DNA from: Podarcis muralis
Lineage: Eukaryota
Assembly: GCF_964188315.1 (NCBI RefSeq)
Contig: NC_135667.1
Coordinates: forward strand, 26,040,001-26,104,000
DNA: 64,000 bases
Reading direction: 5' to 3'
Shown: positions 1 through 24,289 of the stretch, in pieces
Layout of the letters: the number at the start of each line of letters is the position of its first letter
How positions within the stretch are numbered: the stretch's first letter is position 1
The notes under the pieces: model-generated
What the model was told of the DNA's origin: nothing
Database searches by the model: none
Seen by the model: the letters and a program-made list of their open reading frames with translations, nothing else
Position numbers and translations under genes: made by a program

Positions 1-1349
1 CAGAGACACCCATTTTGTGGGGGCGGTGCTCTCAAGCAAATCACCTGGCTCCTGCAAAAGCACAGCCCCCAAAGACATGTTTTGAGAGGCCAAGCTCTCA
101 TATAACTTCTGCGGGAGCCTGGCCCTGAAAGACATACGTCCCAATTTTCCTCTACAGGATGTTAGAGGGTATGCTATGCCAATGTTGGAGGTAGTGACAG
201 AGGAAGCCTGTTGGGCACCTGGGGCGTTGCACCCAGGGGTGGGGCCAACGCCCATAGGGGCGGGCAAAGGTGGAGCTAGCGGCGTTTTGTGGGCCCCAGG
301 GGGTGCATCAGTGTCAGCGCGCATCCCATGTGTGTGTGTTGTTGTCTGCGCACATCCTGAGGTGCGTCAGCGCACAGCCCAAGAGGGTGCACTGGCGGCA
401 GAGAGAGTCCCGGGGGGGGGGCGCCGCCTGCAGCGATGTCACCCCCCTCAGGAATGACACCCGGGGTGGAACGCCCCCACCACACCCACCTTGCTCTGCC
501 TCAGGTTGGAGGGAATGGCTGACATGAGGCAACCTTGCGTCTCCTACAGCCTTCAATCACTCATTCCTCCATCTTTTAATCAGTGCAGGTGAATTCCTGT
601 AGGGTGAAACAGGAAAGGGTGAGGGCCTCTCCAGGTGGGGCTTAAGCAAAGGGTTGGATGTAACACTTCCCCTTACCCTTGGCTAGGTAGATTCACCACA
701 GTTTGTTATGAACAGTTAGTATCCTGCACCATTGTCCTCTACTGTAAATCTATTGTGTTAAAATTAATAGTCACCCAAGATTGTGTTTTGCCTCCTTATT
801 TCCTGTGTGGTTGCAAATGGACACACATTCCCAAGCACTTCCTTCCTTCCATCCCCTCCACAGAAACTGGATAGGAAAGGTTGCAGCTGAATGTGTTTAA
901 TTTCTCACTGTTCTGTATAAAAGATGCATCCTACCAACTACACAATATATTTTATGTCTGGAGGTACAGACTAGGGTATTGAAATCGGAAGGACATTAAG
1001 TGTTCACAATATAATTTTGCAAAGGTATCCCCAATATTTCTCCAAAATGTTTGTGTATAATGGTGGCCAAGCAGAGCTGGGAGAAGCAGGTTGGAGGAAA
1101 TGTAATATATGCACGGTGCCTGCCAATTAGGAAGGCAGTATATAAGGCAATTTAAGCTTAAGCCAAATGAATTTGGTAGGGCTGTCTTCCTATACATCTT
1201 GGTGCTAAATTGGAATGGCTGCACTGAAATTAATAGTGTTGAAGTGTAAATCTATCTTTAGATCACATCCTGAACATAATTCCTAGGCCCTTTCATAAAG
1301 CAGACCATGACACAGGCATCTGCTGATGAGAAATGATTTTTTAAAAATT

Positions 1350-1580
1350 ACTCTTATTCCCCTTGACAACCTTATGTCATTAATGTGCAGCCTGGTTAAC
1401 AAGGTGCTTCGTATTTAGTAGTTAGCAGCAACCAGGTCATTAAAAAGTTTTACCCAAAGTAATTATAGGAATAAATGTCTCTCAGCCTTCTCCCTCTGGG
1501 AGTGAGAGTTCTGTCAGTTTCTCTGAGGGCTTTGAGCAAACACAAAAGCCCTAATTATAACTTGGCAAAACTCTTGAGGC
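1350..1580. promoter_or_regulatory. Candidate olfactory receptor enhancer/promoter (H/P/J-element-like homeodomain + O/E-like site cluster)
   Basis: TCATTAAAAAGTT at 1437-1449 is the reverse complement of AACTTTTTAATGA. Further HD cores: TCATTAATG 1377-1385, TAATTA 1460-1465 and 1552-1557. O/E-like sites: TCCCTCTGGGA 1491-1501, TCTCTGAGGG 1520-1529. Function is inferred. Confidence 0.5.
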
Positions 1581-2844
1581 CTTGTTGATGAGGGAGGGAA
1601 CAAAGCCTTCTGGAACCAAAGTTTGGAGTTGAACTTGGAGTCTCCAAGGTACAGCATTGGTTGTGTGACAGGCAGGTGGAAAAGAGACAGAGTGAGAGAC
1701 AAATGTTATGCCAAATGATTTTTTAATGGCACAAAACAAAGGCCTGAGGTCTAATGCTGTTGTTCACATCTATAAGACAATCAGTTTTATTGTTTATAGT
1801 CAATGGCCAGCACAATACAGTACGAGCACAAAACACACAGCTACAAAACAAAAGACATTACATGCACCTGACCAGGACAAATCTTCAATGTCCAAGATTT
1901 ACGAACATTATATATAATAATACCTGAACAGAGCTATGCAGATGTTCTAATTCATCAATGTGTAATGAATGTGCTCTATTTGGGGCTATCTTAGGACCAG
2001 TTGAGGAAGCTCAAGCTGCTGCAAAAGGCTATGGCCAAACTGTTGGTGGGGGCAGACTACTGCCAGCTCATAGCTTCATACCCTCCAACGTCTTTGAGCC
2101 AAAAGCCTGGGCACTCCCCCCGCCCCACATGCTGCCACCCGCATGTGTTCAGGCCCCCCACATGATTTCACCACTTATTCCCCCATCCAGTTTTGTCCCA
2201 CCATCACTGGCGCACCCTCCACTGCCTATCTTTGTTGTCTGGCCTCCCTCATTACTTCCGCTGCTGCTGCAACAAGGCCACTATCACGGCAAGGTCTGCT
2301 GTTGCCTTGCCACTGTGAGTCCTGATGAGGCCCGCTACCACTGTCCACTGCCATGAAGTTCATCGAGGTCTGCTGCTGCCACTGTGAAGCCCTATGAGGC
2401 CCGCCACTGCTGTGAGGCCCAGCAAACTGAGCCACTGCCTTGAGGCCTGATGAAGTTCACTGCCGCCACCAACCTCCACTGTGGCTGCTGACATACTTCC
2501 AGAAGTTGACACTGCACCAGAAGTGCATTTCCAGAAGTGCAGCCTGCTTCCTTGCAGCACATCAGTGGCCATGGTTGATATCTGGACCTAAATGGAGGCC
2601 TCTGTCAGTAGCAGAGAAACTGGGGCATCACAGATAGATATAAGGAGTCAGGGTGGCTTTTGTCAATTTGTGATGTCCCAGAGAAATCAGGACTATTGGT
2701 GGGTGTGTAACTCCAGTAATTTAAAGCTTGTCCATCTGCTACCAGGCCAGGTTCAAGGTTTTCATGTTGATTAAAAGGTCCTTAAAAACTTGAGTCCAGG
2801 GTACCTTAAGGAGCAATAGATGCCTTATTTGTTGTTGTTGTCGT

Positions 2845-4806
2845 TTAGTCGTTTAGTCGTGTCCGACTCTTCGTGACCCCATGGACCAGAGCACGCCAGG
2901 CACCTCTGTCCTCCACTACTTCCCGCAGTTTGGTCAGACTCATGCTGGTAACCTCGAAAACACTATCCAACCATCTCGTCCTCTGTCGCCCCCTTCTCCT
3001 TTTGCCCTCCATCTTTCCCAGCATCAGTGTCTTCTCCAGGGAGTCTTCTCTTCTCATGAGGTGGCCAAAGTACTGGAGCCTCAGCTTCACGATCTGTCCT
3101 TCCAGTGAGCACTCAGGGCTGATTTCCTTAAGAATGGATGCGTTTGATCTTCTTGCAGTCCATGGGACTCTCAAGAGTCTTCTCCAGCACCATAATTCAA
3201 AAGCATCAATTCTTCGGCAATCAGCCTTCTTGATGGTCCAGCTCTCACTTCCATACATCACTACTGGGAAAACCATGGCTTTAACTATACGGACCTTTGT
3301 TGGCAAGGTGACGTCTCTACTTCTCAAGATGCTGTCTAGGCCTGTCATTGCCCTTCTCCCAAGAAGGAGGCGTCTTTTAATTTCGTGGCTGCTGTCACCA
3401 TCTGCAGTGATCATGGAGCCCAAGAAAGTAAAATCTCTCACTGCCTCCATTTCTTCCCCTTCTATTTGCCAGGAGGTGATGGGACCAGTGGCCATGATCT
3501 TCGTTTTTTTGATGTTGAGCTTCAGACCATATTTTGCGCTCTCCTCTTTCACCCTCATTAAAAGGTTCTTTAATTCCTCCTCACTTTCTGCCATCAAGGT
3601 TGTGTCATCTGCATATCTGAGGTTGTTGATATTTCTTCCGGCAATCTTAATTCCAGCTTGGGATTCATCCAGCCCAGCCTTTCGCATGATGTATTCTGCA
3701 TATAAATTAAATAAGCAGGGAGACAAAATACAGCCTTGTCGTACTCCTTTCCCAATTTTGAACCAATCAGTTGTTCCATATCCAGTTCTAACTGTAGCTT
3801 CTTGTCCCACATAGAGATTTCTCAGGAGACAGATGAGGTGATCAGGCACTCCCATTTCTTTAAGAACTTGCCATAGTTTGCTGTGGTCGACACAGTCAAA
3901 GGCTTTTGCATAGTCAATGAAGCAGAAGTAGATGTCTTTCTGGAACTCTCTAGCTTTCTCCATAATCCAGCGCATGTTTGCAATTTGGTCTCTGGTTCCT
4001 CTGCCTCTTCTAAATCCAGCTTGCACTTCTGGGAGTTCTCGATCCACATACTGCTTAAGCCTTCCTTGTAGAATTTTAAGCATAACCTTGCTAGCGTGTG
4101 AAATGAGTGCAATTGTGCGGTAGTTGGAGCATTCTTTGGCACTACCCTTCTTTGGGACTGGGATGTAGACTGATCTTCTCCAATCTTCTGGCCACTGCTG
4201 AGTTTTCCAAATTTGCTGGCATATTGAGTGTAGCACCTTAACAGCATCATCTTTTAAAATTTTAAATAGTTCAGCTGGAATACCATCACTTCCACTGGCC
4301 TTGTTATTTGCAGTGCTTTCTAAGGCCCATTTGACTTCACTCTCCAGGATGTCTGGCTCAAGGTCAGCAACCACACTACCTGGGGTGTACGAGACATCCA
4401 TATCTTTCTGGTATAATTCTTCTGTGTATTCTTGCCACCTCTTCTTGATGTCTTCTGCTTCTGTTAGGTCCTTACCACTTTTGTCTTTTATTATGGTAAT
4501 CTTTGTACGAAATGTTCCTTTCATATCTCCAATTTTCTTGAACAGATCTCTGGTTCTTCCCATTCTATTGTTTTCCTCTATTTCTTTGCATTGCTCGTTT
4601 AAGAAGGCCTTCTTGTCTCTCCTTGCTATTCTTTGGAAATCTGCATTCAATTTCCTGTATCTTTCACTATCTCCCTCGCATTTTGCTTGCCTTCTCTCCT
4701 CCACTATTTGTAAGGCCTCGTTGGACAGCCACTTTGCTTTCTTGCATTTCCTTTTCATTGGGATGGTTTTTGTTGCTGCCTCCTGTACAATGTTACGAGC
4801 CTCCAT
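2845..4806 (-). pseudogene. BovB ORF, reverse transcriptase part
   Basis: 653-aa open frame with NYRTIALISHASK, FIDYAKAFD, GVRQGCILSP, LRYADDT and the RTE C-terminus (RGRQRTRWLD ... RTRLND). Confidence 0.92.
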
Positions 4807-5818
4807 CCACTCTGTCCACCAAATCTAAATCCTTAAACCTGTTCCTCACTTCCACTGTGTATTCATAAGGGATTTGACTTAGATTGTATCTTACCGGCCC
4901 AGTGGTTTTTCCTACTTTCTTCAGTTTAAGCTTGAATTTTACTATAAGAAGCTGATGATCTGAGCCACAGTCAGCTCCAGGTCTTGTTTTTGCTGCCTGT
5001 ATAGAGCTTCTCCATCTTTGGCTGCAGAGAATATAATCAATCTGATTTCGATGCTGCCCATCTGGTGATGTCCATGTGTAGAGTCGTCTCTTGTGTTGTT
5101 GGAAAAGCGTGTTTGTGATGACCAGCTTGTTCTCTTGACAGAACTCTATTAGCCTTTGCCCTGCTTCATTTTGATCTCCAAGGCCAAACTTGCCAGTTGT
5201 TCCTGCCAGAACATCCTTCTTTGGTGTCACTTCTATAAGGTGTTGTAAGTCTTCATAGAATTGGTCAATTTCAGTTTCTTCAGCACCAGTAGTTGGTGCA
5301 TAAACTTGGATTACTGTGATGTTAAAAGGTCTGCCTTGGATTCGTATCGAGATCATTCTATCATTTTTGAGATTGCATTCCAGTACAGCTTTCACCACTC
5401 TTTTGTTGACTATGAGGGCCACTCCATTTCTTTTACGGGTTTCTTGCCCACAGTAGTAGATGTGATGGTCATCCGAACTGAATTCGCCCATTCCCGTCCA
5501 TTTTAGTTCACTGATGCCCAGGATGTCAATATTTATTCTTGCCATCTCATTTTTGACCACCTCCAACTTACCCAGGTTCATGGTTCTTACATTCCAGGTT
5601 CCTATGCAATATTTTTCTTTACAGCATTGGACTTTCCTTTCGCTTCCAGGCATATCCGCAACTGAGCGTCCTTTCGGCTTTGGCCCAGCCGCTTCATCAG
5701 CTCTGGATCTACTTGTACTTGCCCTCTGCTCTTCCCCAGTAGCATGTTGGACGCCTTCCGACCTGAGGGGCTCATCTTCCAGCGTCATAACTTTTATATG
5801 CCTGTTGTCTTTGTCCAT
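4793..5818 (-). pseudogene. BovB ORF, N-terminal apurinic-like endonuclease part (GDWNA motif deleted, frameshifted from RT part)
   Basis: IGTWNVRTMN, ILGISELKW, VIQVYAPT and NQIDYIL motifs are present. KKDVL is joined directly to AGTTGKFG. The reading frame shifts near 4800-4810. Confidence 0.9.
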
Positions 5819-6439
5819 GGAGTTTTCTTGGCAAGGATACTGGAGTGGCTTGCCGGTTCCTCCTCCAGGTGGATCATGTTTGGTCGAAACTCTCCACTAT
5901 GACCTGTTCATCTTGTGTACCCTGCTCGGCGTAGTTCATAGCTTCTCTGAGTTCTTCAAGCCCCTTCGCCACGGCAAGGCAGTGATCCATGAAGGGGAGA
6001 TGCCTTATATCCCTGCCCAATCACTGAAGTGATTAGTGGTCTTCATTCACTGTCTGTAGTCCCCCATGGTTCAGACAGATAGATCATAGACATCAGGAGT
6101 TGTGATCAGTTCTGTGGAACTCCCTTCCTGTTGAGATAAATGATTTGATTATTTATTTGTTTAAAGGCCTGGGGGGCATTAATGTGCCTGATATGGAGGA
6201 TATAATTATTTTCTTTATATTTTTATTGCTGGTTGTCAGAAATCAAGAGCAAAGATTACAAAACAAACATTCAAAATGGTGGGGATTAAAAAACCCCAGC
6301 TGCCAGCTGCCTAAATTAAGTCTGGCAGAATAGTATTTTGCACTGGGCTGCCAGGTCAGGTGACTCAGCTGAAGGGGCCTAGAATCCAGCCTGAGTCCCC
6401 CCACCCCACCCGCTTGGTCTTGTCCCAAGCGTGTTCTCC

Positions 6440-7170
6440 CTCATAGAGAGCAAGTGTGGCGGTGGGGGCTGGCAAGACACCCCACTGTTGCTGGGCGGAA
6501 AAGAGTTTGGCCATCTTTAAACAGGGGCTGGCTATTACTGGGGAGGTTTTTATGTTGCCATTTCTTAATTGACAGCCCTAGTTGTTAAATACTCTGCACC
6601 CAACTTCGAGCTCCCTCTTTTCGCTGCATGCATCAGATCACCTGCCCTCCCTCCCTATTGTTAGGCTGTTCGCTTGACCTTGCTACGCCTGTCATGGGGG
6701 CGTCTGCTTTGGGGCAGGGGCCTGGTAGGAATTTTGCCCATTTGGCTGATTGGCTGGTGCTATTTGGGTTTTGCCTACTGCGTAGCAAATTGTCACAACT
6801 TGTAAGGTTGCAGTTGGGCATTGGTTTGGGAATTGGTTGGTGGAGGGGCATGGATTTGGCTGTGCCTGCCCCTCCAAAATGCTGCTGCTGCTTCAAGGGT
6901 TTTCCATTAAAGGAACCCAGGGGCTTGCCATGCTTTTGTCCGAACCCCTGGCAAGGGGCTAGGGCAACGCAAGGGTGACTTACCCTTTCTGACTTCGAGG
7001 GGGGTGCGAATGTCAGACTGTCCCTGAGCGGGGTCAGATAGTCGCAACCAATGCCTAAGCAACCACTCACATTGCTGTAATTTTAATAAAAAAGTTGTGG
7101 CCAACATTATGCCAAAACCTTAAACAAAAATCAAGTGTCATTGTGTTTTATTTGGGGTGTCTTGGGGACC
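6440..7170 (+). mobile_element. LTR-like non-coding repeat, family unassigned (related to 62611-63330)
   Basis: Core 6726-6797 (TAGGAATTTT...TTTTGCCTAC...TAGCAA.TGTCACA) and AATAAA..AAGTTGTGGCC at 7085-7102 resemble 62880-62948 and 63250-63264. Boundaries are uncertain. Confidence 0.4.
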
Positions 7171-7719
7171 TCGACACGCAATTATACCACTCTCATTTTA
7201 GCCATTTTCAGATCAACTGGCTGAGCAAATTACTTCAGCATACCTTTGACTGAGCTGGGTTGGGGACATAACACTGGCTGAGCCTGACTGAACTGGGAAT
7301 CAGCTGACCAAAGCTGAGATCCACTGCATCTTAAACTGCTCATCCTTGCAGATCTTGTCATAGCTCTGCCTCTGCTATGCACTAGCTGCTTGGCTGGGCT
7401 GCATTAGGAGTTTAGCAACAAGTCAGATAAAAGAAGAGTCTGTTTTCTGTTGGAGGTTGAAATTCCAATTGCACTTACATCACACATACACACACACACA
7501 CACATATATATAATGAGATTATGATGTTGGCAGTTTTATTTTTGATCCTTTTTTCCAACGTTCCCTAACACAGAATTCACCTTTTTCACAACTGTTTCAC
7601 ATTGAGTCAGCATTTTAATGTAGCTGTCCACTATGATCCCAAAGTCTCTTTCCAGGTCAGTCACCAACAGGTGACTATTGTGTGAAGTTAGCATTTTTTT
7701 GGCCCCAATGTATACTTAA

Positions 7720-8082
7720 AAAGGTAAAGGTACCCCTGCCCGTACGGGCCAGTTGTGTCCGACTCTAGGGTTGCGTGCTCATCTCACTCTAGAGGCCGTG
7801 AGCCGGCGCCGTCCGAAGACACTTCCGGGTCACGTGGCCAGCGTGACGAAGCTGCAGCTGGCGAGCCAGCACCAGCGCAGCACACGGAAACGCCGTTTAC
7901 CTTCCTGCTATAAAGCGGTTCCTATTTACCTACTTGCACTTAAGGGTGCTTTCAAACTGCTAGGTGGGCAGGAGCTGGGACCGAACGACGGGAGCTCACC
8001 CTGCCGCGGGGATTTGAACCACCGACCATACGATCGGCAAGTCCTAGGCACTGAGGTTTTACCCACAGCGCCACCCGCATTG
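7720..8082 (-). mobile_element. Sauria-type SINE
   Basis: (ACCTTT)n tail and tRNA-related head (GCGGGTGGCGCTGTGGGT..., GGTTCAAATCC on the minus strand). TSD CAATGTATACTTAA at 7706-7719 and 8083-8096. Confidence 0.9.
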
Positions 8083-8305
8083 CAATGTATACTTAAGCAA
8101 TGTATACTTGCTTAAACGAAATCACATTTGACATGTTAATACCCATTCACCCCATTCGGATATATGTTTTGGGTTGTATTGAACTTCCTTGTCTCCCCAC
8201 AAAAAATTGCTAGTCTTTGATAAAATCCTTTTGGCTTTCCTTGACATTCTTAGATTATTATGCATGACAAGAAACCCCCATATTTCACTGTACAATTTAG
8301 GCATA

Positions 8306-8531
8306 CAGTGGTACCTCGGGTTACAGACACTTCAGGTTACAAACTCCGCTAACTCAGAAATAGTACCTCAGGTTAAGAACTTTGCTTCAGGATAAGAACA
8401 GAAATCGTGCGGTGGTGGCATGGTGGCAGCGGGAGGCCCCATTAGCTAAAGTGGTACCTCAGGTTAAGAACAGTTTCAGGTTAAGAACGGACCTCCAGAA
8501 CGAATTAAGTTCTTAACCCGAGGTACCATTG
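8306..8531. mobile_element. Tc1/mariner (Tigger/pogo-like) MITE
   Basis: TIR CAGTGGTACCTCGGGTTA / TAACCCGAGGTACCATTG, with TA on both flanks. Confidence 0.85.
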
Positions 8532-8970
8532 TATTTCATTAACATCGTACTGATCTGTTACATGAAGTGGAGAACATACAGTCGCATCAGTATATGATTT
8601 TCTGCACCCTGGTGTTCATTATGAGTACCAACTAAAAATTTAGTCCATCTGTCTGTGCCACACTTGATGTTGCGATCTGTTGTCTTCTACTGCCCTCTTG
8701 TGCCTGTTATGCAGATTAGCTGCTCTATTATTAATTCAGATCCCATCAGTTCAACCTTGTTTAGGGACATCTACATGTGTTCAGGCTTTCCCAACACAGG
8801 TCACGTAACACAGAGCAGCCATCCTAGATTCTTGCACTGAATAATCTTGTGGCACCCTAAAGACTTTTAATAGTTAAACATCATCATACTTAAAAGTTAT
8901 TTTTAACTCTAACAGTAGTTATAATAGTTCATGATTTTGATTCCTTCTCTTTGGTTAATGTTGAGCATTA

Positions 8971-9320
8971 GGGACGCAGGTGGCGCTGTGGGTTAAACCA
9001 CAGAGCCTAGGGCTTGCTGATCAGAAGGTCGGCGGTTCGAATCCCCGCGACGGGGTGAGCTCCCATTGCTCGGTCCTTGCTCCTGCCAACCTAGCAGTTC
9101 GAAAGCACATCAAAGTGCAAGTAGATAAATAGGTACCGCTCCAGCGGGAAGGTAAACAGTGTTTCCATGCACTGCTCTGGTTCGCCAGAAGCGGCTTAGT
9201 CATGCTGGCCACATGACCCGGAAGTTGTACACCGTCTCCCTCGGCCAATAAAGCAAGATGAGTGCCGCAAGCCCAGAGTAGGTCATGACTGACCTAATGA
9301 TCAGGGGTCCCTTTACCTTT
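8971..9320 (+). mobile_element. Sauria-type SINE
   Basis: GGGACGCAGGTGGCGCTGTGGGTTAAACC head, B-box GGTTCGAATCC, tail CCCTTTACCTTT. Confidence 0.9.
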
Positions 9321-9525
9321 TTATGGGTTTGGTTGTAAGGAATGAAAAATACACAGAAATGGGTTTTGTTGATTTTTTTTTTTAGCCAGCTTTTATTTCA
9401 GACAGTGCATAACAATCCCCTTTGTGGTAGAGAAGGTGCATTTCCTGAAACAGCATTCTATCCATCTTTAAGAAATTACACTGTTCTCCACTTTGGGGGC
9501 AGAGACCTTTAAGAAAGTACCGGTA

Positions 9526-9845
9526 CTGTATTTTTCCGAGTATACGACAAGGTTTTTTATTTTAAAAAATGCTACAAATTTGGGGTCATCTTATACATGG
9601 ATAGTGCTGAGATGGGACGGGTGATCTGTGGCTGCCGCAAGCAGGAGATTGTCAGCGGCATTTGGGGAGGGGTGTTGAATGGTGGCTGTGGCAAGGTCTG
9701 CTGGCGATTGGCTGCTGCGACAATCAGGTCAGGTAGGTGAGCGATTGTTGGCACTCCCCCCCCCAAAAAAAAGCTCAACAAATCTGGGCAATCTTCCCCC
9801 ATTTCTCCAAAAAACAGAGGTTGTTTTATACACAGAAAAATACTA
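9526..9845. mobile_element. Tc1/mariner (Tc2-like) MITE
   Basis: Imperfect TIR CTGTATTTTTCCGAGTATACGAC / GTTTTATACACAGAAAAATAC, preceded by TA. Confidence 0.55.
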
Positions 9846-9984
9846 CAGATGGACATGGTTCTCAAAGGAAATCAATCTGACTTAAATAAATATAATCTAT
9901 AGATACTTTCTCCAGATATACACATACATATACAGGAATAAAACACACAGAACATATTATTATATATCTTTTTTATTTAGTGTA

Positions 9985-10244
9985 CAGTAGAACCTCTACT
10001 TACGGCCACCTCCACTTGGGCCCGACCACAGCAAACCCGGAAGTAAATACCAGGTTTGCCATGATTTGCGCACGCGCAGAAGCGGCTTCTGCCATTTACA
10101 CACATGCAGAAGCGGCTGCCGCAGTCTACAGAAGTGTGCTGCCGCTGAATGTGCCTTCACACAATGCCGCTTCTACCAGTGACCCATTATGCCTACAGGA
10201 CGGGTCACCAGAATGGATTATGGTGGTAAGTAGAGGTTCCACTG
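9985..10244. mobile_element. Tc1/mariner MITE
   Basis: 19-bp TIR CAGTAGAACCTCTACTTAC / GTAAGTAGAGGTTCCACTG (1 mismatch), TA flanks. Confidence 0.85.
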
Positions 10245-11625
10245 TATATATTTAAGTACATAGAATATAGGTCAGCTGTGATTATGTTGATCTTTTCCAG
10301 GCACCTTGATCTTTTTTTTAGCTTTGTACATGTAGGAATTATTTTAAATAGAAAGAGAGAACTAGCTGGTTTGGGTCATTCTATATGTCTAAACTAAAAT
10401 ACCCACAAATATACACATCTGGCCTATAGTCTATTTATATGTCATACATACCACCAAAGCAACAACAACAGAAAATTAAACATCTGTGGCATCTACCTAT
10501 TTGCTAATTTGTGGAAAGAATCATAGAAGCTCTCACTCAAGTTACAACCTGGGTTCGGAAACCATGTGTCAGAATATCCTTAGTGGGTTAGAAAACATAT
10601 TTATGAAGGTAGTGAGTACTGAAACTTTGAAAATTGGGCACTACTGCAAGAAGACAAGCAACACCTGGGAGTTCCTGACTCCATTGCTCTCACACACAGG
10701 AATACACACTCTCTTACACACAAACACACCAAGGAGAAACTTCCTCAGTCCAATACCTAGAACATCTGGCTTCCAGTTCTTCTCTGCCTGAATAGAGGCT
10801 GCCTCCATGACAGCAGGAGATCGTTGGGAAAAGAATAACAAGGTTGACTGCAAACTGACCCCCAGGGACAGGGGGAATGGACTTCATAGTTCGTCTTGGT
10901 ACCTGGCTCTCACTCTGGCATGGGATTTTGGGGGCAAGGAGGTACTGAATGCAAAAGTACTTCACCTACTGAAAACCCTCCAATGCCACCATTAAGAAGC
11001 AGAGGTTTTCCTGTTAGTTAGAGCTTAATTGGACTAAAGTACAGACGTGTGGTAGAAGAGATAAGATGACAAACTGCAGAACAAACCAACTGCAAGGACT
11101 TTAAAGTTTGAACTTGAGATAAGACTTCATTTGGTGCAAAGGACAGTGAGGGAAGAGACTACGGTTTATTTATTTAAAGTTTTCTTCTCTACATTTATGA
11201 TTCAGCAACCCTAAAATATAGAAAATCATCAAACCACCAAATCTAGCACGCGGGGGTGACTTTATCTAAATTAAATAATTTGTTATCTGAATGATTGGAA
11301 TTAATAATTGTATTATAAATGGGTATTGTTATAATGTCGTTACTATTGAACTGTAATTGAAAACTAATAAAAACTATTATATATAGAAAAAAATTACCCA
11401 GAACATCTATGTAGGCCCTATTGTTTGGCAAGTGGTCAAAGATCATGTGGGCCAGGACAATTGGATGGTACATATGCATTTTAAACTGACTGCCAGTGTT
11501 TCCCATAATACTCAAGCAAATAAATTTAAAATGAGTTAAAATATCTGCTGTTCTATGACTCTCCTTTTTGTTTAGATGCTAGATGAAGTAGACACTTTCA
11601 TTGGGCAGGGGGTTTTGAGGATTAA

Positions 11626-11689: not shown

Positions 11690-12640
11690 CTACGAGATAA
11701 CAAGTTTTATTGTAGGGAATTTTAGTTTTTTAATTAATTTTCTCAAGGCCCCCTTTAGTTCTTTGTTCCTTAAGCTATAAATGATGGGATTTATCAATGG
11801 AGGCACCACAGAATAGAGAACAGCAGCTACGAGGTCCCGACCAACTGAGGATGCTGACCTTGGTCTTGTATAAGTAAAAGCTCCAGTGCCCAGAAACAAA
11901 CAGACAATGATTAGGTGTGGGAGGCAGGTGGAGAAGGCTTTGTACCTTCCTTGGGTAGAAGGGATCTTTAGCACAGTGGAGAATATGTATACATAGGAAA
12001 CTAGTATGATAGAGAAGCATATAGATGCCAATGAATATCCCAGGACAAACATTAAGATATCATTGACATACGTATCTGAACAAGAGATCTTCAGCAGTTG
12101 TGGGACATCACAGAAAAACTGTCCAATGGTGTTAGATTTGCAGAAGGATAACCTGAAGGTATTAGCTGTATGCACAACAGAATAAAGCATGCTACCAATC
12201 CAGCAACCAGCTGCCATTTCTACACACACACACCAGCTCATGAGCACCCTGTAATACAAGGGGTGACAGATTGCAGCATAGCGATCATAAGCCATTGCTG
12301 TGAGTAAGAACAATTCTGCATCTGCAAAAGTGATGACCAGGTAGACCTGAGCAACACACCCTGAGTAGGAAATCTGTCTGGAGTTGATCAAAGAGTTCAC
12401 CATGGATTTGGGGATGGTGACGGAGATGTAGGAGATGTCAAGAAAGGAAAGGTTTGCAAGGAAGAAGTACATAGGGGAGTGGAGGTTGTGATCAAGGCCT
12501 ACAGTTGTAATGATCAGAAGGTTTCCTACCAGAGTTGTCAAGTATATAAGAAGAAATGTGGCAAAATGTAGGAGCTGCAGCTCCCGTGTGTTTGAAAATT
12601 CCAGAAGCAAGAATTCACCCACAGAAGTCTGATTGGACAT
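11690..12640 (-). CDS. Olfactory receptor, class II, family 14-like (316 aa, intact)
   Basis: N-glycosylation site NQT, LHSPMYFFLANLS, MAYDRYAAICHPL, FFCDVPQLLKISC, KAFSTCLPHL, PIIYSLRNKE. The KAFSTCLPHL and CDVPQLLK variants are typical of OR14. Confidence 0.95.
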   Translation of the reverse strand: MSNQTSVGEFLLLEFSNTRELQLLHFATFLLIYLTTLVGNLLIITTVGLDHNLHSPMYFFLANLSFLDISYISVTIPKSMVNSLINSRQISYSGCVAQVYLVITFADAELFLLTAMAYDRYAAICHPLYYRVLMSWCVCVEMAAGCWIGSMLYSVVHTANTFRLSFCKSNTIGQFFCDVPQLLKISCSDTYVNDILMFVLGYSLASICFSIILVSYVYIFSTVLKIPSTQGRYKAFSTCLPHLIIVCLFLGTGAFTYTRPRSASSVGRDLVAAVLYSVVPPLINPIIYSLRNKELKGALRKLIKKLKFPTIKLVIS

Positions 12641-14643
12641 TTCTGATGCAGAAGCAGCCCCCTGTTAAAACAAACAGAACAGAACACCATATATTGTTGC
12701 TTATGGAAACAGAAGTAGGAAAACTGGGTGGTAGCACATTATTTATTTGTTTAACAGCATTTATATACCACTTGCTAGGACAAAATACTTCTATGTGCCT
12801 TACAACAGAATCTAAAACAGTCTTTAAAAATACAAATGAATACACATATTAAACAGAAATTTAAAACACTTACTAAAAATACATGTCAAAAGCACATTGC
12901 ATGCCTGGGAAGGCATTCTAGAACAAAATGGCTTAGCAAGCACTGGAAACAATACCATGAAGGCTCCTGTCTAATATCAAAAGCAGGAAGTTCCAACGTG
13001 TATGTCCTGCTACATGAAATGATTGATTTATTGTAAGTGTGGAATGAGCATTATGTGGCACTTGTAAAAGTGCCAGTTCCAAATTTCTAATCAGAGTTGA
13101 ATTTAGGGCACCAAGCCAAGGGGGTACCGCAGGATGCCATGACTATGACATAGTGCACATGCAGAATGGAAGGCAGGGGGCATCAAATTTGGGCCTCACA
13201 CAAGATGCTGATGAAATTTAATAGACCAAATCTGACCCTGTTCTAAGGCATCTAGTGTGCCCGTATGGGGTGGGGTGATCCTTGGCGTAACATAATCATG
13301 TCTTTTAAAGATGCACTAGAGGAAGAATGGAAAGGATTAATGTGGCCACAGAATTTCATCTATGGTAAAATTTGGAATGCAATTTGGAGGTTTATCCTTG
13401 GACAAAACATCAGAGAGCTTTTGAAGGAAATAGCAGAAGTCATAATGAAACTGGTTAGATCCTCCAGGAAGATTAAGGCCTTTAGAGCAGGTTGAAAAAA
13501 CCTTGTACAAATTAACATTAGAAAAGTGCATGATGCAATAATGTTCCCAAGGACCTCACCAGTTTTTCTGACCATAATGGATCTGTAAACAGCAGGTAAC
13601 TTTTTGCTGACCTTATCCACGAGCCCTAAACTAAGAGCAGCATACATAGTTTGGCCAGCCCAATTTTACCCCCCTCCCAAATCATCAATGTATTGTGAAG
13701 TAAACCTATGCAAACTATACAATTTCCCCCTCAAGCATAAAGTGCATTGAGTTGCCTTTAAAATATTTAGTTTAATCCAAATCATTAAAAGTGATGGTGG
13801 CAAAGGAGAAAGAGCAGCATGCAAATACAGGCAAAGGTATTTTCTGTGCGTTGTAATTTTACCTTCCTGGTATGATATATGGTGGTATGTCTGGGGAGAA
13901 AATGTAGATATTTAAAAAGGTGCAACAACAATCTTCTAACGACTGTGCAAAATTGTCCGCTTCAAAGCCAGAGTTGGAAGTTCTTTGAGCAGCCACAGAA
14001 TGAAGACCACCTGCAAGAAAGGCAGTAAGTAGCATTTGACAAAACATGTGATGGCAAAAATCGGAATCATTAGCAGGGCTCTTGTGAAAATCTGTGTTCC
14101 ACATAGGGAGTTTAATTCCCTAAGGCCAACATGAACTATATTCTCAACTGTGTCATTGGCATCTTATCCCTGAGGTGTATTATTCACGATGAATGCTCTA
14201 CTGTTTTAGAATCTTGAATAGTTATCACAGATTGGAAGAGTGAGCAGCCTGTGGTCTGATGGTCACATCTTGGGCTACTTTCATGCTAGTGACAAGGAAA
14301 GGAACAATGGGGGAAAGAGAGTGACAGGAAGAGAGGGAGTGAGGGAGCAGAAAGAGAAAAAGGAATGGAATTCCATCTTTTGGTACTGCCCACATTTAGC
14401 TCTGAAGTTGCCATTGCTGATATCAACCCACCCAACTGACAACATATGGCAAGCAAGCATCCCTCAATGAACTGTGTCATTCTACAGAGAAAATGTTCAT
14501 TTCCTCTGCTATATGGTGTGTGCCATCTCAGTTCTCTGGATCCCTATGTAAATAAAACTACAGTATCCACACACAAGAGAAGAGGTATCAGTGGCCTAAA
14601 GTGAAGTGGGGGTGAGGGTTGTGGGATCTGTTGGGGTCTGACT

Positions 14644-17559: not shown

Positions 17560-18489
17560 ATGTTGGGAAACCAGACAAAGATGGCAGAATTTATTCTCCT
17601 GGGATTTCGGGAATTCTACGAATTGCAGACACTTCTTTTCCTGACATTTCTGGTAATTTATGTTGTGACCATAACTGGAAATATTCTTACTTTTGCCCTT
17701 ATTGTCTTTGATCAGCACCTTCATACCCCCATGTACTTTTTCCTGGGGAATCTCTCCTTCCTGGAGGCCTGCTGTAGCTCCAATATATTCCCACGGATGC
17801 TTTTGGCTCTCATTACTGGAGACAGAAGGATTTCCTACAACAGCTGCTTAACACAGTGGTATCTCTTTGGTTCCTTGGAAGCTACAGAATGTTTTTTACT
17901 CTGTGTGATGTCTTATGACAGGTACCTAGCAATCTGTAAACCATTGCACTATGCAACAACTATGAAAACCCAGACTTCTATCCATTTAGCAGCTGCATCT
18001 TGGTTCAGTGGATTTATAGCTTGCTTGATCTTACTCATTTTGATATTACAGTTAATGTTTTGTGGCCCTAATGAAATGGATCATTACTTCTGTGAATACT
18101 TCCCTCTTCTCAGACTCTCTTGCAGCGACACCAGTGTGTTGGAAATTGCAAGTTACATTGTGGCTGTCATATTTACAGTCCCTCCATTTGTTCTAACTAT
18201 AACCTCCTATGTATACATTATTGCTGCCATTTTAAGGATCCCCTCTGCCACTGGGAGGCAAAAGGCCTTTTCCACCTGCTCCTCTCACTTGATTGTGGTT
18301 TCAATTTTTTATGGCACACTCATGATTGAGTATATGATACCGAAGTCAACAGAGAACAGAGAGATGCAAATGATTTCTTCTCTCTTGTACACAGCTCTGT
18401 CGCCTCTGGCCAACCCATTTATATACAGCCTAAGGAACAAGGAGGTAAAAAATTCACTGAGGAATAATATTAGGAAACTTGTGAGGTGA
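17560..18489 (+). CDS. Olfactory receptor A, class II (OR6/OR11-like), 309 aa, intact
   Basis: NQT, LHTPMYFFLGNLSFLE, MSYDRYLAICKPLHY, KAFSTCSSHL, PFIYSLRNKEV. Confidence 0.95.
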   Translation: MLGNQTKMAEFILLGFREFYELQTLLFLTFLVIYVVTITGNILTFALIVFDQHLHTPMYFFLGNLSFLEACCSSNIFPRMLLALITGDRRISYNSCLTQWYLFGSLEATECFLLCVMSYDRYLAICKPLHYATTMKTQTSIHLAAASWFSGFIACLILLILILQLMFCGPNEMDHYFCEYFPLLRLSCSDTSVLEIASYIVAVIFTVPPFVLTITSYVYIIAAILRIPSATGRQKAFSTCSSHLIVVSIFYGTLMIEYMIPKSTENREMQMISSLLYTALSPLANPFIYSLRNKEVKNSLRNNIRKLVR

Positions 18490-19160
18490 AGCAACTTAAT
18501 ATGTAATAGAAGGAACCTGAGCATTTTCTGTTGCATATCTCTCTCTCTCTTTTGGAGAGTGTTATACAGTTCAGTCTCTGAAAGGATGCATCAATCCATC
18601 CATTTCCAGGATTAATAATACATTTTATTGAAAATCATGAACCTGTTTAAATAATCCAGTCATTCTTATTATTTATTTAATTCTTATTTTTGTGTGTTTT
18701 ACTGTATTTCCATATATTGTCCACCCTCTTTATTTTAAATGAGTGCATAGTATAAAAATATTTTTAATAAATAGTGTTTGTAAAATAATAATAATGAGAT
18801 TATATAATTCATTAATTGCATTGGATGACTATTTGTAAAAACGAGCGTATTTTTGTGTGAGGAGAATATCAGCTCCGCAATCAGTCAATAAAGGTGTGGG
18901 AAACCCCAAACTGAAAGCATTGGTGGCTAAAAAAAACAAATGAGTGGCGTATGGCAGGGTTCAATCCACATTCCACATTCAAAACCAAACAATAATGCTT
19001 TCTATATTTTATGTAGCATAATTCAATAAATATATAACCACAAATATTTGTTTCCTAGTGATTTGTTTGTAAAACAAATGGAATGCCAATTGGGAGAGCA
19101 AAAACAAATGACACATTAATGTTTTTTCCACTAGAGTCAGAGAAACAGAAAGATCCAATA

Positions 19161-19223
19161 CAGTGGTACCTCGGGTTAAGAACTTAATTCGTCCAGAAGT
19201 GTCTGTAACCCGAGATACCACTG
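19161..19223. mobile_element. Minimal 63-bp Tc1/mariner MITE (essentially TIRs only)
   Basis: CAGTGGTACCTCGGGTTA / TAACCCGAGATACCACTG, TA flanks. Duplicate at 29780-29842. Confidence 0.8.
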
Positions 19224-19290
19224 TACAGAATTTTTTCATGTAGATTCTTAGCCCAGATTCAAATTGTATTAGGCAAAGAGGGTTTTTTAA

Positions 19291-19352
<62 letters not shown>
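19291..19352. repeat. (CA)n microsatellite (paralog at 29913-29938 is much shorter)
   Basis: Read directly from the sequence. Confidence 0.9.
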
Positions 19353-19368
19353 CAACAATGATTGATTA

Positions 19369-19610
19369 CAGTGTTACCTTGGGTTACAGACACTTCAGGT
19401 TACAGATGCTTCAGGTTACAGACTCCACTAACCCAGAAATAGAACCTCGGGTTAAGAACTTTGCTTCAGGATGAGAACAGAAATTGCACAGCAGTGGCAC
19501 GGCAGCAGCGAGAGGCCCCATTAGCTAAAGTGGTACCTCAGGTTAAGAACAGTTTCAGGTTAAGAACAGACCTCCAGAATGAATTAAGTTCTTAACCCGA
19601 GGTACCACTG
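19369..19610. mobile_element. Tc1/mariner MITE, same family as 8306-8531
   Basis: Same TIRs and body, TA flanks. Confidence 0.85.
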
Positions 19611-20290
19611 TATTGAAAAATAGTTTATTTTTTTCCTGATCTTCCGCTTACATGACATGAGAGACTGTTGCACTGGTTAGGAAGTGAAGTCACTTATTCT
19701 TTATAATAAAAGTATTTTGCCTAGTATATGGAGCTAGAGTTGGATAGGGAGATGGAAGATGAGCACAGAGCTCATTCATTGCTTGTGCATGCTTTTTAGT
19801 TAGCTAGTGTGGCTGCAATTCTTCACATACTTGGGAGTAAGCTTCACTGATTGCAATGGAACTGACTTCTGAGTAGACATGGTTGGGATAGCACACACAT
19901 CAAGAGAGTAACAAAGAAAACACAAAAATAAGGAAGATGAAAATGGCACCTCAAAATGATATGGGGGGTGGAGGTCAGTTTTACAGAATGAAACTAGTAG
20001 CATTCCTCCATTTCATAAGCATGCTTTACTATAATATAAAATGCATTTTACAGTCCTGTTTGGGGTGTTGACTCCTTTTTGCTTTAAGCTAGCTTTGCAC
20101 CAGCAACTGATTAAAATATGGGATTATTAGAACGTTATTACACCTAACAAAGAAGGAATGTGAGAATATATTTAGAAAACTTCATCTCATATTAAGCCAT
20201 TGTATATGTAGGTGATGTTTAATGCAGTTTCCAGTATTCATTTATAAAATGTAGCTTAAGAAAAACATGAGCACTGAGAGAAATGTGCAA

Positions 20291-20293
<3 letters not shown>

Positions 20294-20336
<43 letters not shown>
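20294..20336. repeat. (TG)n microsatellite (paralog at 30878-30921)
   Basis: Read directly from the sequence. Confidence 0.9.
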
Positions 20337-20337
<1 letters not shown>

Positions 20338-22556
20338 GCTGCTTTTATTTATATTTTGGAAAATATTAGCTTAATGTTTTGAATATCTGATTTTATCAGT
20401 AATTTTAATGTATATTTATATTTTATGTAAACCACTTAGAATTTTTTTGAGGATTAAGAGTCTATTAAATAAAAAGACTAAATTAAGATTAGAGTCCTAT
20501 TAGATTTCTATTCCTAATAAGGAGCTATCCATGCTGAAAGGTCTAGACACTGCTTTGGTACCATTCCAGTACTTTTGCCAAATGTTCCTGGAAAATTCGC
20601 TTAGGACATGATCTGATGGTTCCTGGGAAGGTGTTCCAGGGACCATAGGATTTCACAACCCTTATCTATGGGTAGAGAGAAAAGTCTACCCTTGGAAGCC
20701 CCCTGCCAGCCACCACCATCATCAGTGCTGTGGCAGCAGAGGGAGCAAAACAGGAGGCATTCTGGAGTCAGCCGTCCGTGAGTTGCACATATTGGTGTAT
20801 CCTAGTTGGTCAGATGCCAATCATGAGAGATGAGAGACCTTGCTGGCCAGGTTACTAATGCTTCAATCATGGATGATTAGATATTCTGCTTCTGTAACAG
20901 AATTCTAAATGTTAATTCCCTGACTAATCTCCTGGGGAAAGGTAGTTTAGTAAGAGTTGGCTGCTCAGCTGCAGACATATTGGGATCCTACCAGTTGCAG
21001 AGAGCATGCCCCTGTATGCCTGTTGCTGGCAGTCACAAGTAGGGAGGCTGCTGTGTACTCAAGTCCTACTTGCAGGCTTCCCAAAGGCATCTGGTTGGTC
21101 ATTGTGAACTAGATTGGCTTTTGGTCTCATCCAGCAGAGCTTTTCTTACATTCTTATGTACTATAGCATAAGATAAGGCAGCCTTCCACATTCCATCAGC
21201 TGTGAACCTGCTATTTACTTATAAACATCTGAGGTTAGTGTTGCTTCTAGTCTTTGGCACTCATATAAGTTGAAGAAGCTGGGTATAATGGTTTATGTTT
21301 TGATTTGATTTGATTAAAAGAATTCCTGCACTGATCTGAAAAGACTGATCTCTAGAAGCATCTAGGGATGTATTCTCCTGTGATTCTGAACTGAAGCAAT
21401 GGTAACCAGGAAAGATATTCCCTGCAGGACAACTCATGCCATACAACACATATAGAACAGAACATCTCAGATATCTTGTCTTCTAAATTGCAGGCAGGCA
21501 GGATAAAGGAAAGAAGGAAGGAAGGAAAGAACAAAAGAAGACAGATGTGCCTTAATTCTTAATAAAGTGAAGATGAGAAAGGAGAAAATGTGGTTTTCAT
21601 GCCATGGAGGTAAGCAGTTTTCTGTCTCACTTATCCTTCTGCAAATTTTCAATCTGATCAACTTAATTATATCCATGAACTTCAACAATCATGCTGTGAA
21701 ACATTCAGGAATTGTAATATTTAGGCAATGCATAACCAGTGTTACAAGTATACCTGCTGCTGCTGAGATAAGTTGGGTGTGGACCATATTGGTCTCCTTT
21801 TTATGGATGACCACTGGGACCCCATGTCATGCTACGAGATGTGCATGATAAATGTTTCTGAAATGCAAACATTGGACACATGTGCATCATAACACGTATA
21901 ATCATTGTTTTTTTGTGATGGCACCCCACTCTGTTCTGCACTTTACATAGGATTTTCATAAGACTTGGGAGCACTCTCTCCTTGCTACCTTGAAAATGAT
22001 GGCTTTCTTTGGTTAGGTGGGAAATTGCTGTCTTGGCATGGGGGATGGAAACTACACTGGGATAAATCAACTTAGTATAAAGGAGAGCCTCCTTAAAGGG
22101 CCCAAGATAGTGGGGACTGGCCATGGCACCTCAGGTTGGGGTCTCTGCCTGGCTAGAATCCTCATTCTCTTTGCCCAGTGAGAACTTGCCAACTTGGCTT
22201 GCACCATGACAAGGTTCAGCACTGGCCAACTCCCATGGTGCAGGCTTGGCTTAGTCCAACTGCTGGATTCCATTCCACTAGCATCAGGTAAGTGGAATGA
22301 TGAGCCGATCCAGGCCCTACTGCCATTCCAACCTGTATCATGCTTGGTGCCATCAATAAAGATTTGGCCTGATTTCATCCCAACTCCTGGTGTCCTGTCT
22401 GTTCATTTGCTGCTCTTCTGGGTCAAATAATTCGCCTGCCAGGCTAATCTATTAACTTTAATGTTATCTCTTTTTTCAAAGATAGATTCCAAGATCTCTT
22501 TAATCTCTGATGAATGCACTTCATAAACTATGGAACAGACTACATGAGGAAAGCAG

Positions 22557-24082: not shown

Positions 24083-24289
24083 AAGGTAAAGGTACCCCTG
24101 CCTGTACGGGCCAGTCGTGTCCGACTCTAGGGTTGTGTGCCCATCTCACTTAAGAGGCCGGGGGCCAGCGCTGTCCAGAGACACTTCCGGGTCACGTGGC
24201 CAGCGTGATGAAGCTGCTCTGGCGAGCCAGCACCATCACAGCACACGGAAACACCATTTACCTTCCCGCTATAAAGCGGTACCTATTTA
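24083..24289 (-). mobile_element. Sauria-type SINE, 3' part (split by copia insertion)
   Basis: AAGGTAAAGG tail through GCGGTACCTATTTA. Continues at 27499. TSD TGATCATCATTA 24071-24082 / TGATCATTATTA 27654-27665. Confidence 0.9.

What the first reader, a model, noticed from the sequence alone, without database searches (positions are those of the whole stretch)
1350..1580. Exact H/P/J-element 13-mer inside a homeodomain + O/E-like cluster: candidate reptilian OR enhancer
Seen: TCATTAAAAAGTT (1437-1449) is the exact reverse complement of AACTTTTTAATGA. Three more HD cores (1377-1385, 1460-1465, 1552-1557) and two O/E-like sites (1491-1501, 1520-1529) lie within 230 bp of non-repetitive-looking DNA, about 11 kb from the nearest OR start codon in the window. 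Known: this 13-mer is the conserved core shared by mouse OR enhancers (H, P, J) and some OR promoters, which are bound by Lhx2 and Ebf. Rough chance estimate: at about 60% AT, both strands, an exact hit is expected about 0.01 times per 64 kb. Inference: this is a cluster-control enhancer of Greek-island type in a lizard, a lineage where I know of no functional mapping of such elements.
Basis: partly seen in the sequence, partly recalled or inferred. Interest (0 to 1): 0.75.

Follow-up and report, generated by a model that had tools for sequence, protein, structure and literature searches.

The report
Conserved lizard smell-receptor control element
The flagged motif sits in a roughly 430-base non-coding stretch that wall lizards, a worm lizard, an alligator lizard and the Komodo dragon have all kept beside the same smell-receptor gene; it carries the docking sites that switch such genes on in mice, so it is probably a real, untested control element for these genes.

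Summary
The exact 13-mer AACTTTTTAATGA lies at 1437-1449(-), where 0.01 are expected per window.

The window is Podarcis muralis OZ076966.1:26,040,001-26,104,000, inside an OR cluster and not at its edge.

The decisive new result is conservation. Window 1340-1770 (shoulder from 845) is a single-copy conserved non-coding block. It lies 4-10 kb downstream of the same OR14A16-like gene in P. raffonei, Rhineura, Elgaria and Varanus, that is, across Episquamata.

- The TAATTA cores at 1460 and 1552 are essentially invariant.
- The O/E site is a perfect EBF palindrome in Varanus and is weakened in Podarcis.
- The 13-mer reads AACTTTTTAATTA in Rhineura and Varanus, so the exact identity to mouse is a Podarcis-specific last step.

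Against a strict Greek-island reading:
- There is no Lhx2/Ebf composite motif.
- There are no chromatin, binding or activity data.
- The block was not detected in skink, gecko, turtle or alligator flanks.
- A distal promoter or 5' exon is not excluded.

Verdict: a conserved OR cis-regulatory element, most likely an H/P-type enhancer (about 0.55). It is a new member of a known kind. The scan has noted similar elements elsewhere in this genome.

The parts
845..1339 (.). Left shoulder of the conserved block, conserved with Rhineura from 845 and with Elgaria from about 1153
   Evidence: blastn: window 845-1764 matches Rhineura at 72% over 931 bp (E 3e-149); window 1153-1766 matches Elgaria at 69% over 649 bp (E 3e-87).
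1340..1770 (.). CNE1 core: a single-copy conserved non-coding element present in five squamates downstream of the same OR
   Evidence: The nhmmer profile hits only the orthologous place in each locus. See alignments A1 and L-INS-i. 51% of columns are invariant. Depth is single-copy in three other Podarcis species. There is no Rfam match.
1377..1385 (-). Homeodomain site (TAATGA on the minus strand); the ATTA core is invariant in all five species
1437..1449 (-). Extended homeodomain site AACTTTTTAATGA, identical to the mouse H/P/P3 13-mer
   Evidence: locate it. It is exact in P. raffonei, reads AACTTTTTAATTA in Rhineura and Varanus, and is 10/13 in Elgaria with a shifted TAAT. Mouse function of the 21-mer that contains it: 10.1101/2021.09.28.462154.
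1460..1465 (.). Palindromic TAATTA homeodomain site; AATTAT is invariant (Varanus reads CAATTA)
1491..1501 (-). O/E (EBF) site, weakened in Podarcis
   Evidence: The orthologous site is a perfect TCCCNNGGGA palindrome in Varanus. It has 1 mismatch in Elgaria and Rhineura and 2 mismatches in Podarcis.
1520..1529 (-). Second O/E-like site (YYYCARRRR), kept in Rhineura and Elgaria but not in Varanus
1550..1557 (.). CCTAATTA, an invariant Lhx2-type homeodomain site
   Evidence: One of four invariant runs of 7 bp or more.
1594..1607 (+).
   Evidence: The factor assignment is from my own knowledge of consensus sites and was not tested.
1606..1617 (.). E-box CAYCTG present in Rhineura, Elgaria and Varanus but lost in Podarcis (CTTCTG)
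11690..12640 (-). OR14A16-like receptor gene, the constant syntenic partner of CNE1; the element lies 4.4-10.2 kb past its stop codon in every species
   Evidence: Pfam 7tm_4. Orthologues share 82-99% identity. Loci L002, L003, L006 and L007.

Best explanation
Window 1340-1770 is an ancient cis-regulatory element of this olfactory-receptor cluster. It most likely works as a distal enhancer of the mouse H/P (Greek-island-like) kind.

Proposed mechanism, inferred throughout: in olfactory sensory neurons a LIM-homeodomain factor (Lhx2, perhaps with Emx2) binds the three or four conserved TAAT sites, including the extended AACTTTTTAAT(G/T)A site. An O/E (Ebf) factor binds the site at 1491-1501. 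Together they keep the element accessible and raise the chance that a neighbouring OR is chosen, above all the OR14A16-like gene that has stayed next to it.

Shown here: the motifs, their clustering, single-copy status, intergenic position, and conservation with conserved synteny across Episquamata.

Inferred, not shown: factor binding, open chromatin, enhancer activity and the target genes.
For: - The exact 13-mer is present against 0.01 expected. The 21-mer that contains it drives OR choice in mouse when multimerised.
- This is the only HD plus O/E cluster of its density in 64 kb, against 0.035 expected.
- In the 11.6 kb between the window start and the OR, only this block and one other (8551-8950) align with distant squamates. 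Scores are E 3e-149 for Rhineura, 3e-87 for Elgaria and 8e-32 for Varanus. The block is always downstream of the same OR.
- The profile search finds it once per locus and nowhere else.
- HD sites are enriched 3-7 fold in the orthologous block of each species. An EBF palindrome with at most 1 mismatch sits at the orthologous place in Varanus, Elgaria and Rhineura.
- No OR coding remnant lies within 4.2 kb (P. raffonei) or 5.3 kb (Varanus) beyond it, or anywhere in window 1-11600.
- Depth is single-copy in three congeners and no Rfam family matches.
- Mouse OR enhancers are defined by the same HD plus O/E content inside OR clusters (PMC5318403, PMC7804114, PMC5638857).
Against: - There is no credible Lhx2/Ebf composite motif. 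The one pattern hit has no TAAT core. HD and O/E sites are 23-26 bp apart.
- The O/E site has 2 mismatches in Podarcis, and an E-box kept elsewhere is lost there.
- P. muralis versus P. raffonei shows no significant drop in divergence: 3.5 against 4.2 differences per 100 bp, P=0.59.
- The block was not detected in the 10-kb flanks of the related OR in Tiliqua, Eublepharis, Macrochelys or Alligator.
- OR-upstream (promoter-like) blocks in the same window are also conserved, so conservation alone does not prove an enhancer.
- The most constrained run (GAGGGAACAAAGCC) is neither an HD nor an O/E site.
- There are no expression or chromatin data. One bulk RNA run of unknown tissue gave no reads.
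- Genome-wide, the 13-mer should occur a few hundred times by chance. This is my extrapolation.
Confidence: 0.55

Rival explanations
1. It is a distal promoter plus non-coding first exon of an OR gene, for instance one transcribed leftwards towards the ORs that lie left of the window. OR promoters also carry HD and O/E sites.
For: - OR promoters share the HD plus O/E content and usually lack the composite motif, as this block does (PMC5318403, PMC11643329).
- The mouse 13-mer also occurs in the P3 promoter.
- Promoter-like blocks upstream of other ORs in this window are conserved too.
- On the minus strand the 13-mer is directly preceded by a donor-like G|GTAAA. GT is kept in 4 of 5 species, and Varanus reads CAG|GTAAAC.
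- Other follow-ups in this genome report upstream OR exons.
Against: - No OR coding sequence lies within 4.2-5.3 kb beyond the block in P. raffonei or Varanus. According to unchecked scan notes, the nearest OR to the left in P. muralis lies about 23 kb from the window start.
- The block is larger and far better conserved than the promoter-like blocks: E 3e-87 against 3e-28 in Elgaria. Its motif density is also higher.
- No gene model overlaps it in any of the annotated loci.
- Elgaria has GC at the putative donor.
Confidence: 0.2
2. It is a constrained non-coding element unrelated to OR choice, for example a tissue-specific enhancer of a non-OR gene, an architectural element, or an unannotated non-coding RNA. 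On this view the HD-type motifs are incidental, as they are in many developmental enhancers.
For: - The longest invariant runs (GAGGGAACAAAGCC, GTTGTGTG, AGCCTGG) are not HD or O/E sites.
- TAATTA, Sox/Tcf-like and TGTCA motifs are common in developmental enhancers (my own knowledge).
- The O/E site is degenerate in Podarcis.
Against: - The block is embedded in an OR-only neighbourhood. All nine long ORFs with Pfam hits other than transposon proteins are ORs, and unchecked scan notes place more ORs to the left.
- It has stayed linked to one OR through local rearrangements.
- It was not detectable beside the closest related ORs sampled in turtle and alligator (orthology uncertain), whereas developmental enhancers are usually conserved that deep.
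- There is no Rfam hit, and indels are not in multiples of three.
Confidence: 0.2
3. It is a chance motif match in unconstrained or repeat-derived DNA.
For: The 13-mer should occur by chance a few hundred times in a 1.5-Gb genome (my extrapolation). The scan has read many windows of this genome.
Against: The block aligns across Episquamata while its surroundings do not. It is single-copy in the window, in 191 kb of related loci and in three congeners.
Confidence: 0.03

Closest known systems
Mouse class II OR enhancers H and P (and the synthetic x21 choice enhancer derived from P)
   Same: - It is an intergenic element inside an OR cluster.
- Several homeodomain sites sit next to O/E-like sites.
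- It carries the same extended homeodomain 13-mer AACTTTTTAATGA.
- It is conserved between species over a few hundred bp (PMC7804114, PMC5638857).
   Different: - No sequence homology to H or P was shown or could be tested here.
- The exact 13-mer is a derived Podarcis state; Rhineura and Varanus read AACTTTTTAATTA.
- Activity and targets are unknown.
- The element lies downstream of its nearest OR.
Greek islands (63 Lhx2/Ebf co-bound mouse OR enhancers)
   Same: The position and the HD plus O/E content match, and the sites lie close together in a heterochromatin-prone, OR-only region.
   Different: The composite Lhx2/Ebf motif with fixed 1-bp spacing is absent. In mouse it is found in 35/63 islands at a stringent threshold and 55/63 at a permissive one. 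Co-binding and inter-chromosomal hub formation cannot be tested here.
J element (mammalian class I OR enhancer)
   Same: It has a roughly 430-bp core conserved over a very long time span, four HD sites plus one O/E-like site, and an extended HD site of nearly the same sequence (AAACTTTTAATGA).
   Different: - J contains a composite motif that is needed for its activity, and the class I motif AAACTTTTC.
- J acts over 3 Mb on class I genes.
- The neighbours here are class II-type ORs (OR14, OR2AP1-like).
OR gene promoters (e.g. mouse P3)
   Same: They have HD and O/E sites, lack the composite motif, and in P3 carry the 13-mer.
   Different: This block is at least 4-5 kb from any OR coding exon on one side and downstream of the OR on the other. 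Its motif density and conservation are higher than in the promoter-like blocks of the same window.

Membership tests
OR cluster enhancer of mouse H/P/Greek-island kind | Intergenic position within or beside an OR gene cluster | tested here: met
   Nine intact 7tm_4 ORFs lie to the right. Earlier scan notes, not checked here, place ORs 23 and 37 kb to the left. There is no OR coding remnant in 1-11600.
OR cluster enhancer of mouse H/P/Greek-island kind | Cluster of homeodomain (TAATKR) and O/E-like (YYYCARRRR) sites | tested here: met
   There are 4 HD and 3 O/E-like sites in 231 bp. This is unique in the window, against 0.035 expected. The same holds in the orthologous blocks.
OR cluster enhancer of mouse H/P/Greek-island kind | Extended homeodomain site AACTTTTTAATGA (H, P) | tested here: met
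   It is exact in both Podarcis species, 12/13 in Rhineura and Varanus, and 10/13 in Elgaria.
OR cluster enhancer of mouse H/P/Greek-island kind | Sequence conservation between species | tested here: met
   It is conserved across Laterata and Toxicofera. It was not found in skink, gecko, turtle or alligator flanks.
Greek islands in the strict sense | Lhx2/Ebf composite motif with stereotyped 1-bp spacing | tested here: not met
   The pattern from PMC11643329 gives one hit (1398-1414), which has no TAAT core. The nearest HD-O/E pairs are 23-26 bp apart.
Greek islands in the strict sense | Lhx2 and Ebf co-binding, open chromatin in mature OSNs, inter-chromosomal hub contacts | not testable with these tools
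   No lizard olfactory ATAC, ChIP or Hi-C data could be reached.
OR cluster enhancer of mouse H/P/Greek-island kind | Raises the choice frequency of ORs in cis (deletion or transgene) | not testable with these tools
   This needs an experiment.
OR promoter | Transcription start and first exon a few kb upstream of an OR coding exon on the same strand | tested here: inconclusive
   There is no OR coding sequence within 4.2-5.3 kb beyond the block. The block lies downstream of the nearest OR. A donor-like GT sits next to the 13-mer on the minus strand. No informative RNA data exist.
Dispersed repeat / transposon fragment | Multiple copies in the genome | tested here: not met
   There is no second copy in the window or in the loci. 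Depth is flat and single-copy at 560-1775 in three Podarcis species, against 250-1400 at the neighbouring repeat 1785-1906.

The most novel reading that the evidence does not exclude
The extended homeodomain grammar of OR choice (AACTTTTTAAT-type sites flanked by TAATTA and O/E sites) is not a mouse peculiarity. It would be an amniote-wide, more than 300-million-year-old code, and squamate OR clusters would carry long-lived H/P-type choice enhancers, each tied to particular receptor genes. This element, and the similar ones that the scan noted 12.9 Mb away and on another chromosome, would be the first members mapped outside mammals and fish.
Probability: 0.3. Interest if true: 0.7.

Novelty: new member of a known kind. 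Interest (0 to 1): 0.55.

Why it matters
OR choice enhancers have been mapped functionally in mouse only; from memory, mouse elements were also tested in zebrafish. My literature searches found nothing for reptiles.

This is a 430-bp element kept next to the same receptor gene since the common ancestor of lacertids and monitor lizards. From my own knowledge of published squamate timetrees, that is roughly 150-190 million years. It gives a concrete, short, testable candidate for asking whether the Lhx2/Ebf logic of one-neuron-one-receptor choice, and the extended homeodomain site used as a synthetic choice enhancer, operate in sauropsids.

It also shows natural motif turnover, which predicts species differences that could be tested. 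The O/E site is weakened and the E-box is lost in Podarcis, and TAATTA has changed to TAATGA.

Tried and rejected
- **Chance match:** rejected by the conservation.
- **TE or repeat origin:** rejected.
- **Structured RNA:** no Rfam hit at E of 1 or below.
- **Hidden OR exon or pseudogene:** tblastn with four window ORs found nothing in window 1-11600 or beyond the block in four species.
- **Deeper homologues:** profile and sensitive blastn searches of the flanks of related ORs in Tiliqua, Eublepharis, Macrochelys and Alligator found nothing. This shows only that the block is not within 10 kb of those genes.
- **Expression:** no indexed RNA run holds the stretch, and one bulk RNA run of unknown tissue (12% read) gave no reads on it. 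This is uninformative for an olfactory-specific element.
- **Shallow constraint:** P. muralis versus P. raffonei divergence is not significantly lower in the core.
- **Second motif cluster:** the near-13-mer at 63531-63543 and its cluster were tested as a second conserved example. They do not align with the Elgaria locus L011.
- **Vassalli 2011:** the original 13-mer paper is not held, so its claim is cited through PMC7804114.

Full report
**1. The observation**

AACTTTTTAATGA occurs once in the window, at 1437-1449 on the minus strand. Dinucleotide-preserving shuffles give 0.01 exact matches per window. With one mismatch allowed there are three matches against 0.33 expected. One of the other two lies inside a LINE reading frame (3555-3567). 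The other lies about 1 kb upstream of the OR at 61522-62487.

The other homeodomain cores are at 1377-1385, 1460-1465 and 1552-1557. The two O/E-like sites, at 1491-1501 and 1520-1529, are also present. I scored them with the published definitions TAATKR and YYYCARRRR (PMC5638857). The 231 bp hold four distinct HD sites and three O/E-like sites.

This is the only such cluster in the 64 kb. Second-order Markov simulations give 0.035 clusters of that density per window. Neither O/E-like site is a canonical EBF palindrome in this species: the better one has two mismatches to TCCCNNGGGA.

**2. Where this is**

The nearest OR protein is encoded on GCA_964188315.1, record OZ076966.1. This places the window at 26,040,001-26,104,000. 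A neighbouring hit on the same 59.6-Mb record is named Podarcis muralis.

The window holds nine intact 7tm_4 reading frames. It also holds a BovB-type LINE at about 2829-5997, an LTR element and recent segmental duplications. Earlier scan notes, which I did not check, place further ORs 23 kb and 37 kb to the left of the window. If they are right, the site is inside a cluster and not at its edge. The stretch 600-1960 has no second copy in the window.

**3. The decisive test: conservation**

The OR at 11690-12640(-), named OR14A16-like, has one-to-one-looking orthologues across squamates. Their identity is 99% in P. raffonei, 86% in Elgaria, 84% in Eublepharis, 83% in Varanus and 82% in Tiliqua. 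Rhineura and Lacerta agilis fall in the same 90% cluster. I fetched each locus with 10-kb flanks.

In the 11.6 kb between the window start and this OR, only two blocks align with species outside Lacertidae. One is the block that holds the finding:

| Species | Window range | Identity | Aligned bp | E-value |
|---|---|---|---|---|
| Rhineura | 845-1764 | 72% | 931 | 3e-149 |
| Elgaria | 1153-1766 | 69% | 649 | 3e-87 |
| Varanus | 1413-1760 | 67% | 354 | 8e-32 |

The second block is 8551-8950.

In every species the first block lies downstream of the same OR, from 4.4 kb away in Varanus to about 10 kb away. A profile built from the core (1340-1770) finds exactly one copy per locus. It finds nothing else in the window or in the other loci.

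By NCBI taxonomy these species span Laterata and Toxicofera, that is, Episquamata. The block was not found in the 10-kb flanks of the related gene in the skink, the gecko, a turtle or an alligator. This says only that it is not within reach there.

In three further Podarcis species, contig depth over 560-1775 is flat and single-copy. The adjacent 1785-1906 is a high-copy repeat.

**4. Motif-level reading (alignments)**

- **HD cores.** The ATTA core at 1377-1385 is invariant. AATTAT at 1460-1465 is invariant. CCTAATTA at 1550-1557 is one of only four invariant runs of 7 bp or more.
- **The 13-mer.** It is exact in both Podarcis species. It reads AACTTTTTAATTA in Rhineura and Varanus, and AACTTTTTAAAAT followed by a shifted TAAT in Elgaria. 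The ancestral state was therefore most likely the TAATTA form. The letter-perfect identity to mouse is a late Podarcis change within the same class of site.
- **The O/E site.** It is a perfect EBF palindrome in Varanus. It has one mismatch in Elgaria and Rhineura and two in Podarcis.
- **An E-box.** CAYCTG at 1606-1611 is kept in the three distant species and lost in Podarcis.
- **The longest invariant run.** It contains a Sox/Tcf-type AACAAAG; that assignment is my own and is untested.

**5. What it most likely is**

This is a constrained, single-copy, intergenic block in an OR-only neighbourhood. It has the densest HD plus O/E content of the window and has stayed linked to one receptor gene. 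That combination is the anatomy of mouse OR elements such as H, P and J (PMC5318403, PMC7804114, PMC5638857). The 21-mer that contains this 13-mer acts as a choice enhancer in mouse when multimerised.

I therefore read it as an OR cis-regulatory element, most likely a distal enhancer bound by Lhx2-type and Ebf factors. Binding, accessibility, activity and targets are all inferred.

**6. Limits and rivals**

The Lhx2/Ebf composite motif is what distinguishes Greek islands from OR promoters in mouse (PMC5608512, PMC11643329). It is absent here: the one pattern hit has no TAAT core. The block is therefore not a member of Greek islands in the strict sense, though 28 of 63 mouse islands also lack a strong composite.

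Conservation alone does not separate enhancer from promoter. Blocks 1-2 kb upstream of the OR at 22557 (20764-20996 and 21253-21480) align with Elgaria, Varanus or Tiliqua. The region upstream of the OR14A16-like gene aligns with Rhineura. Those blocks are shorter and score far lower, and they have fewer sites.

No OR coding sequence lies within 4.2 kb (P. raffonei) or 5.3 kb (Varanus) beyond the block. Even so, a minus-strand donor-like G|GTAAA directly abuts the 13-mer. GT is kept in four of five species. A distal first exon is therefore not excluded.

Divergence between the two Podarcis species is not significantly lower in the core. No informative RNA data exist. There is no Rfam hit.

The 13-mer should occur a few hundred times by chance in a genome of this size; this is my extrapolation. 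The weight of the case therefore rests on the conservation and the clustering, not on the exact match.

**7. Novelty**

My searches of the held literature found no mapping of OR enhancers in reptiles. Within this scan, follow-ups have already reported similar conserved elements elsewhere in this genome. They include the same 13-mer 12.9 Mb away on this chromosome (s1-179023) and a homeodomain-EBF element on another chromosome (s1-152536). I did not check those notes.

This is therefore a further instance of a known kind in a lineage where none has been tested. It is not a new kind of element.

Noticed in passing
window 8551-8950 (core 8595-8800): This is a second conserved non-coding block, 2.9 kb past the stop codon of the OR14A16-like gene. 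It is shared with Lacerta, Rhineura, Elgaria, Varanus and also the skink Tiliqua. It has only one HD site and no O/E-like site. It could be 3' UTR or another regulatory element. A GTAAGT-like string is present in Rhineura and Varanus but not in lacertids.
   Followed up: partly
window 2829-5997: A BovB-type LINE on the minus strand has long open frames: 653 aa with a reverse transcriptase and 341 aa with an endonuclease. It is absent at the orthologous place in P. raffonei and Lacerta agilis. It is therefore a recent insertion in the P. muralis lineage, only 1 kb from the conserved element.
   Followed up: partly
window 1785-1906: A short high-copy repeat directly abuts the conserved block. 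Summed contig depth is 250-1400, against 9-31 for single-copy DNA, in three Podarcis species. The only RNA reads laid fall here, and at low likeness.
   Followed up: no
window 63531-63543 and 63615-63963: AACTTTTTAATCA (one mismatch to the 13-mer) sits next to the second-best HD/O/E cluster of the window. It lies 1.0-1.5 kb upstream of the OR at 61522-62487(-). The region is AT-rich and does not align with the Elgaria locus of the closest relative, so it may be a promoter or chance.
   Followed up: partly
window 20764-20996 and 21253-21480: Short blocks 1.1-1.8 kb upstream of the OR at 22557-23501(+) align with the region upstream of its orthologue in Elgaria, Varanus or Tiliqua. They are likely a promoter or an upstream exon. 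They carry few HD or O/E sites.
   Followed up: no
window 12669-14588: The region upstream of the OR14A16-like gene is conserved with Rhineura. It carries a loose group of four HD and four O/E-like sites at 13418-14167, and is probably that gene's promoter.
   Followed up: no
window 17560-23501 versus L003 and L006: The two ORs next to the OR14A16-like gene are in the opposite orientation to it in Podarcis. In Elgaria and Varanus they are in the same orientation. This points to a local inversion, while the OR-CNE2-CNE1 order stayed intact.
   Followed up: no
window 24287-27400: Two 300-nt direct repeats are 100% identical (24287-24586 and 27101-27400). They flank a frame with an integrase core domain at 26416-27117. 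This looks like a young LTR element inside one copy of a roughly 10.6-kb segmental duplication (17971 onwards and 28580 onwards, 99% identical). I only describe it.
   Followed up: no
L002 18983-19056 and L006 17664-17741: There is a weak 78-bp match (69%, E 5e-4) about 1.9-2.0 kb beyond the conserved block in both P. raffonei and Varanus. In Varanus it sits next to another HD/O/E cluster at L006 17724-17960. In P. muralis it would fall about 0.9 kb left of the window.
   Followed up: no
L003 12919-12931: In Elgaria a one-mismatch copy of the 13-mer (AACTATTTAATGA) lies about 100 bp from the second conserved block.
   Followed up: no
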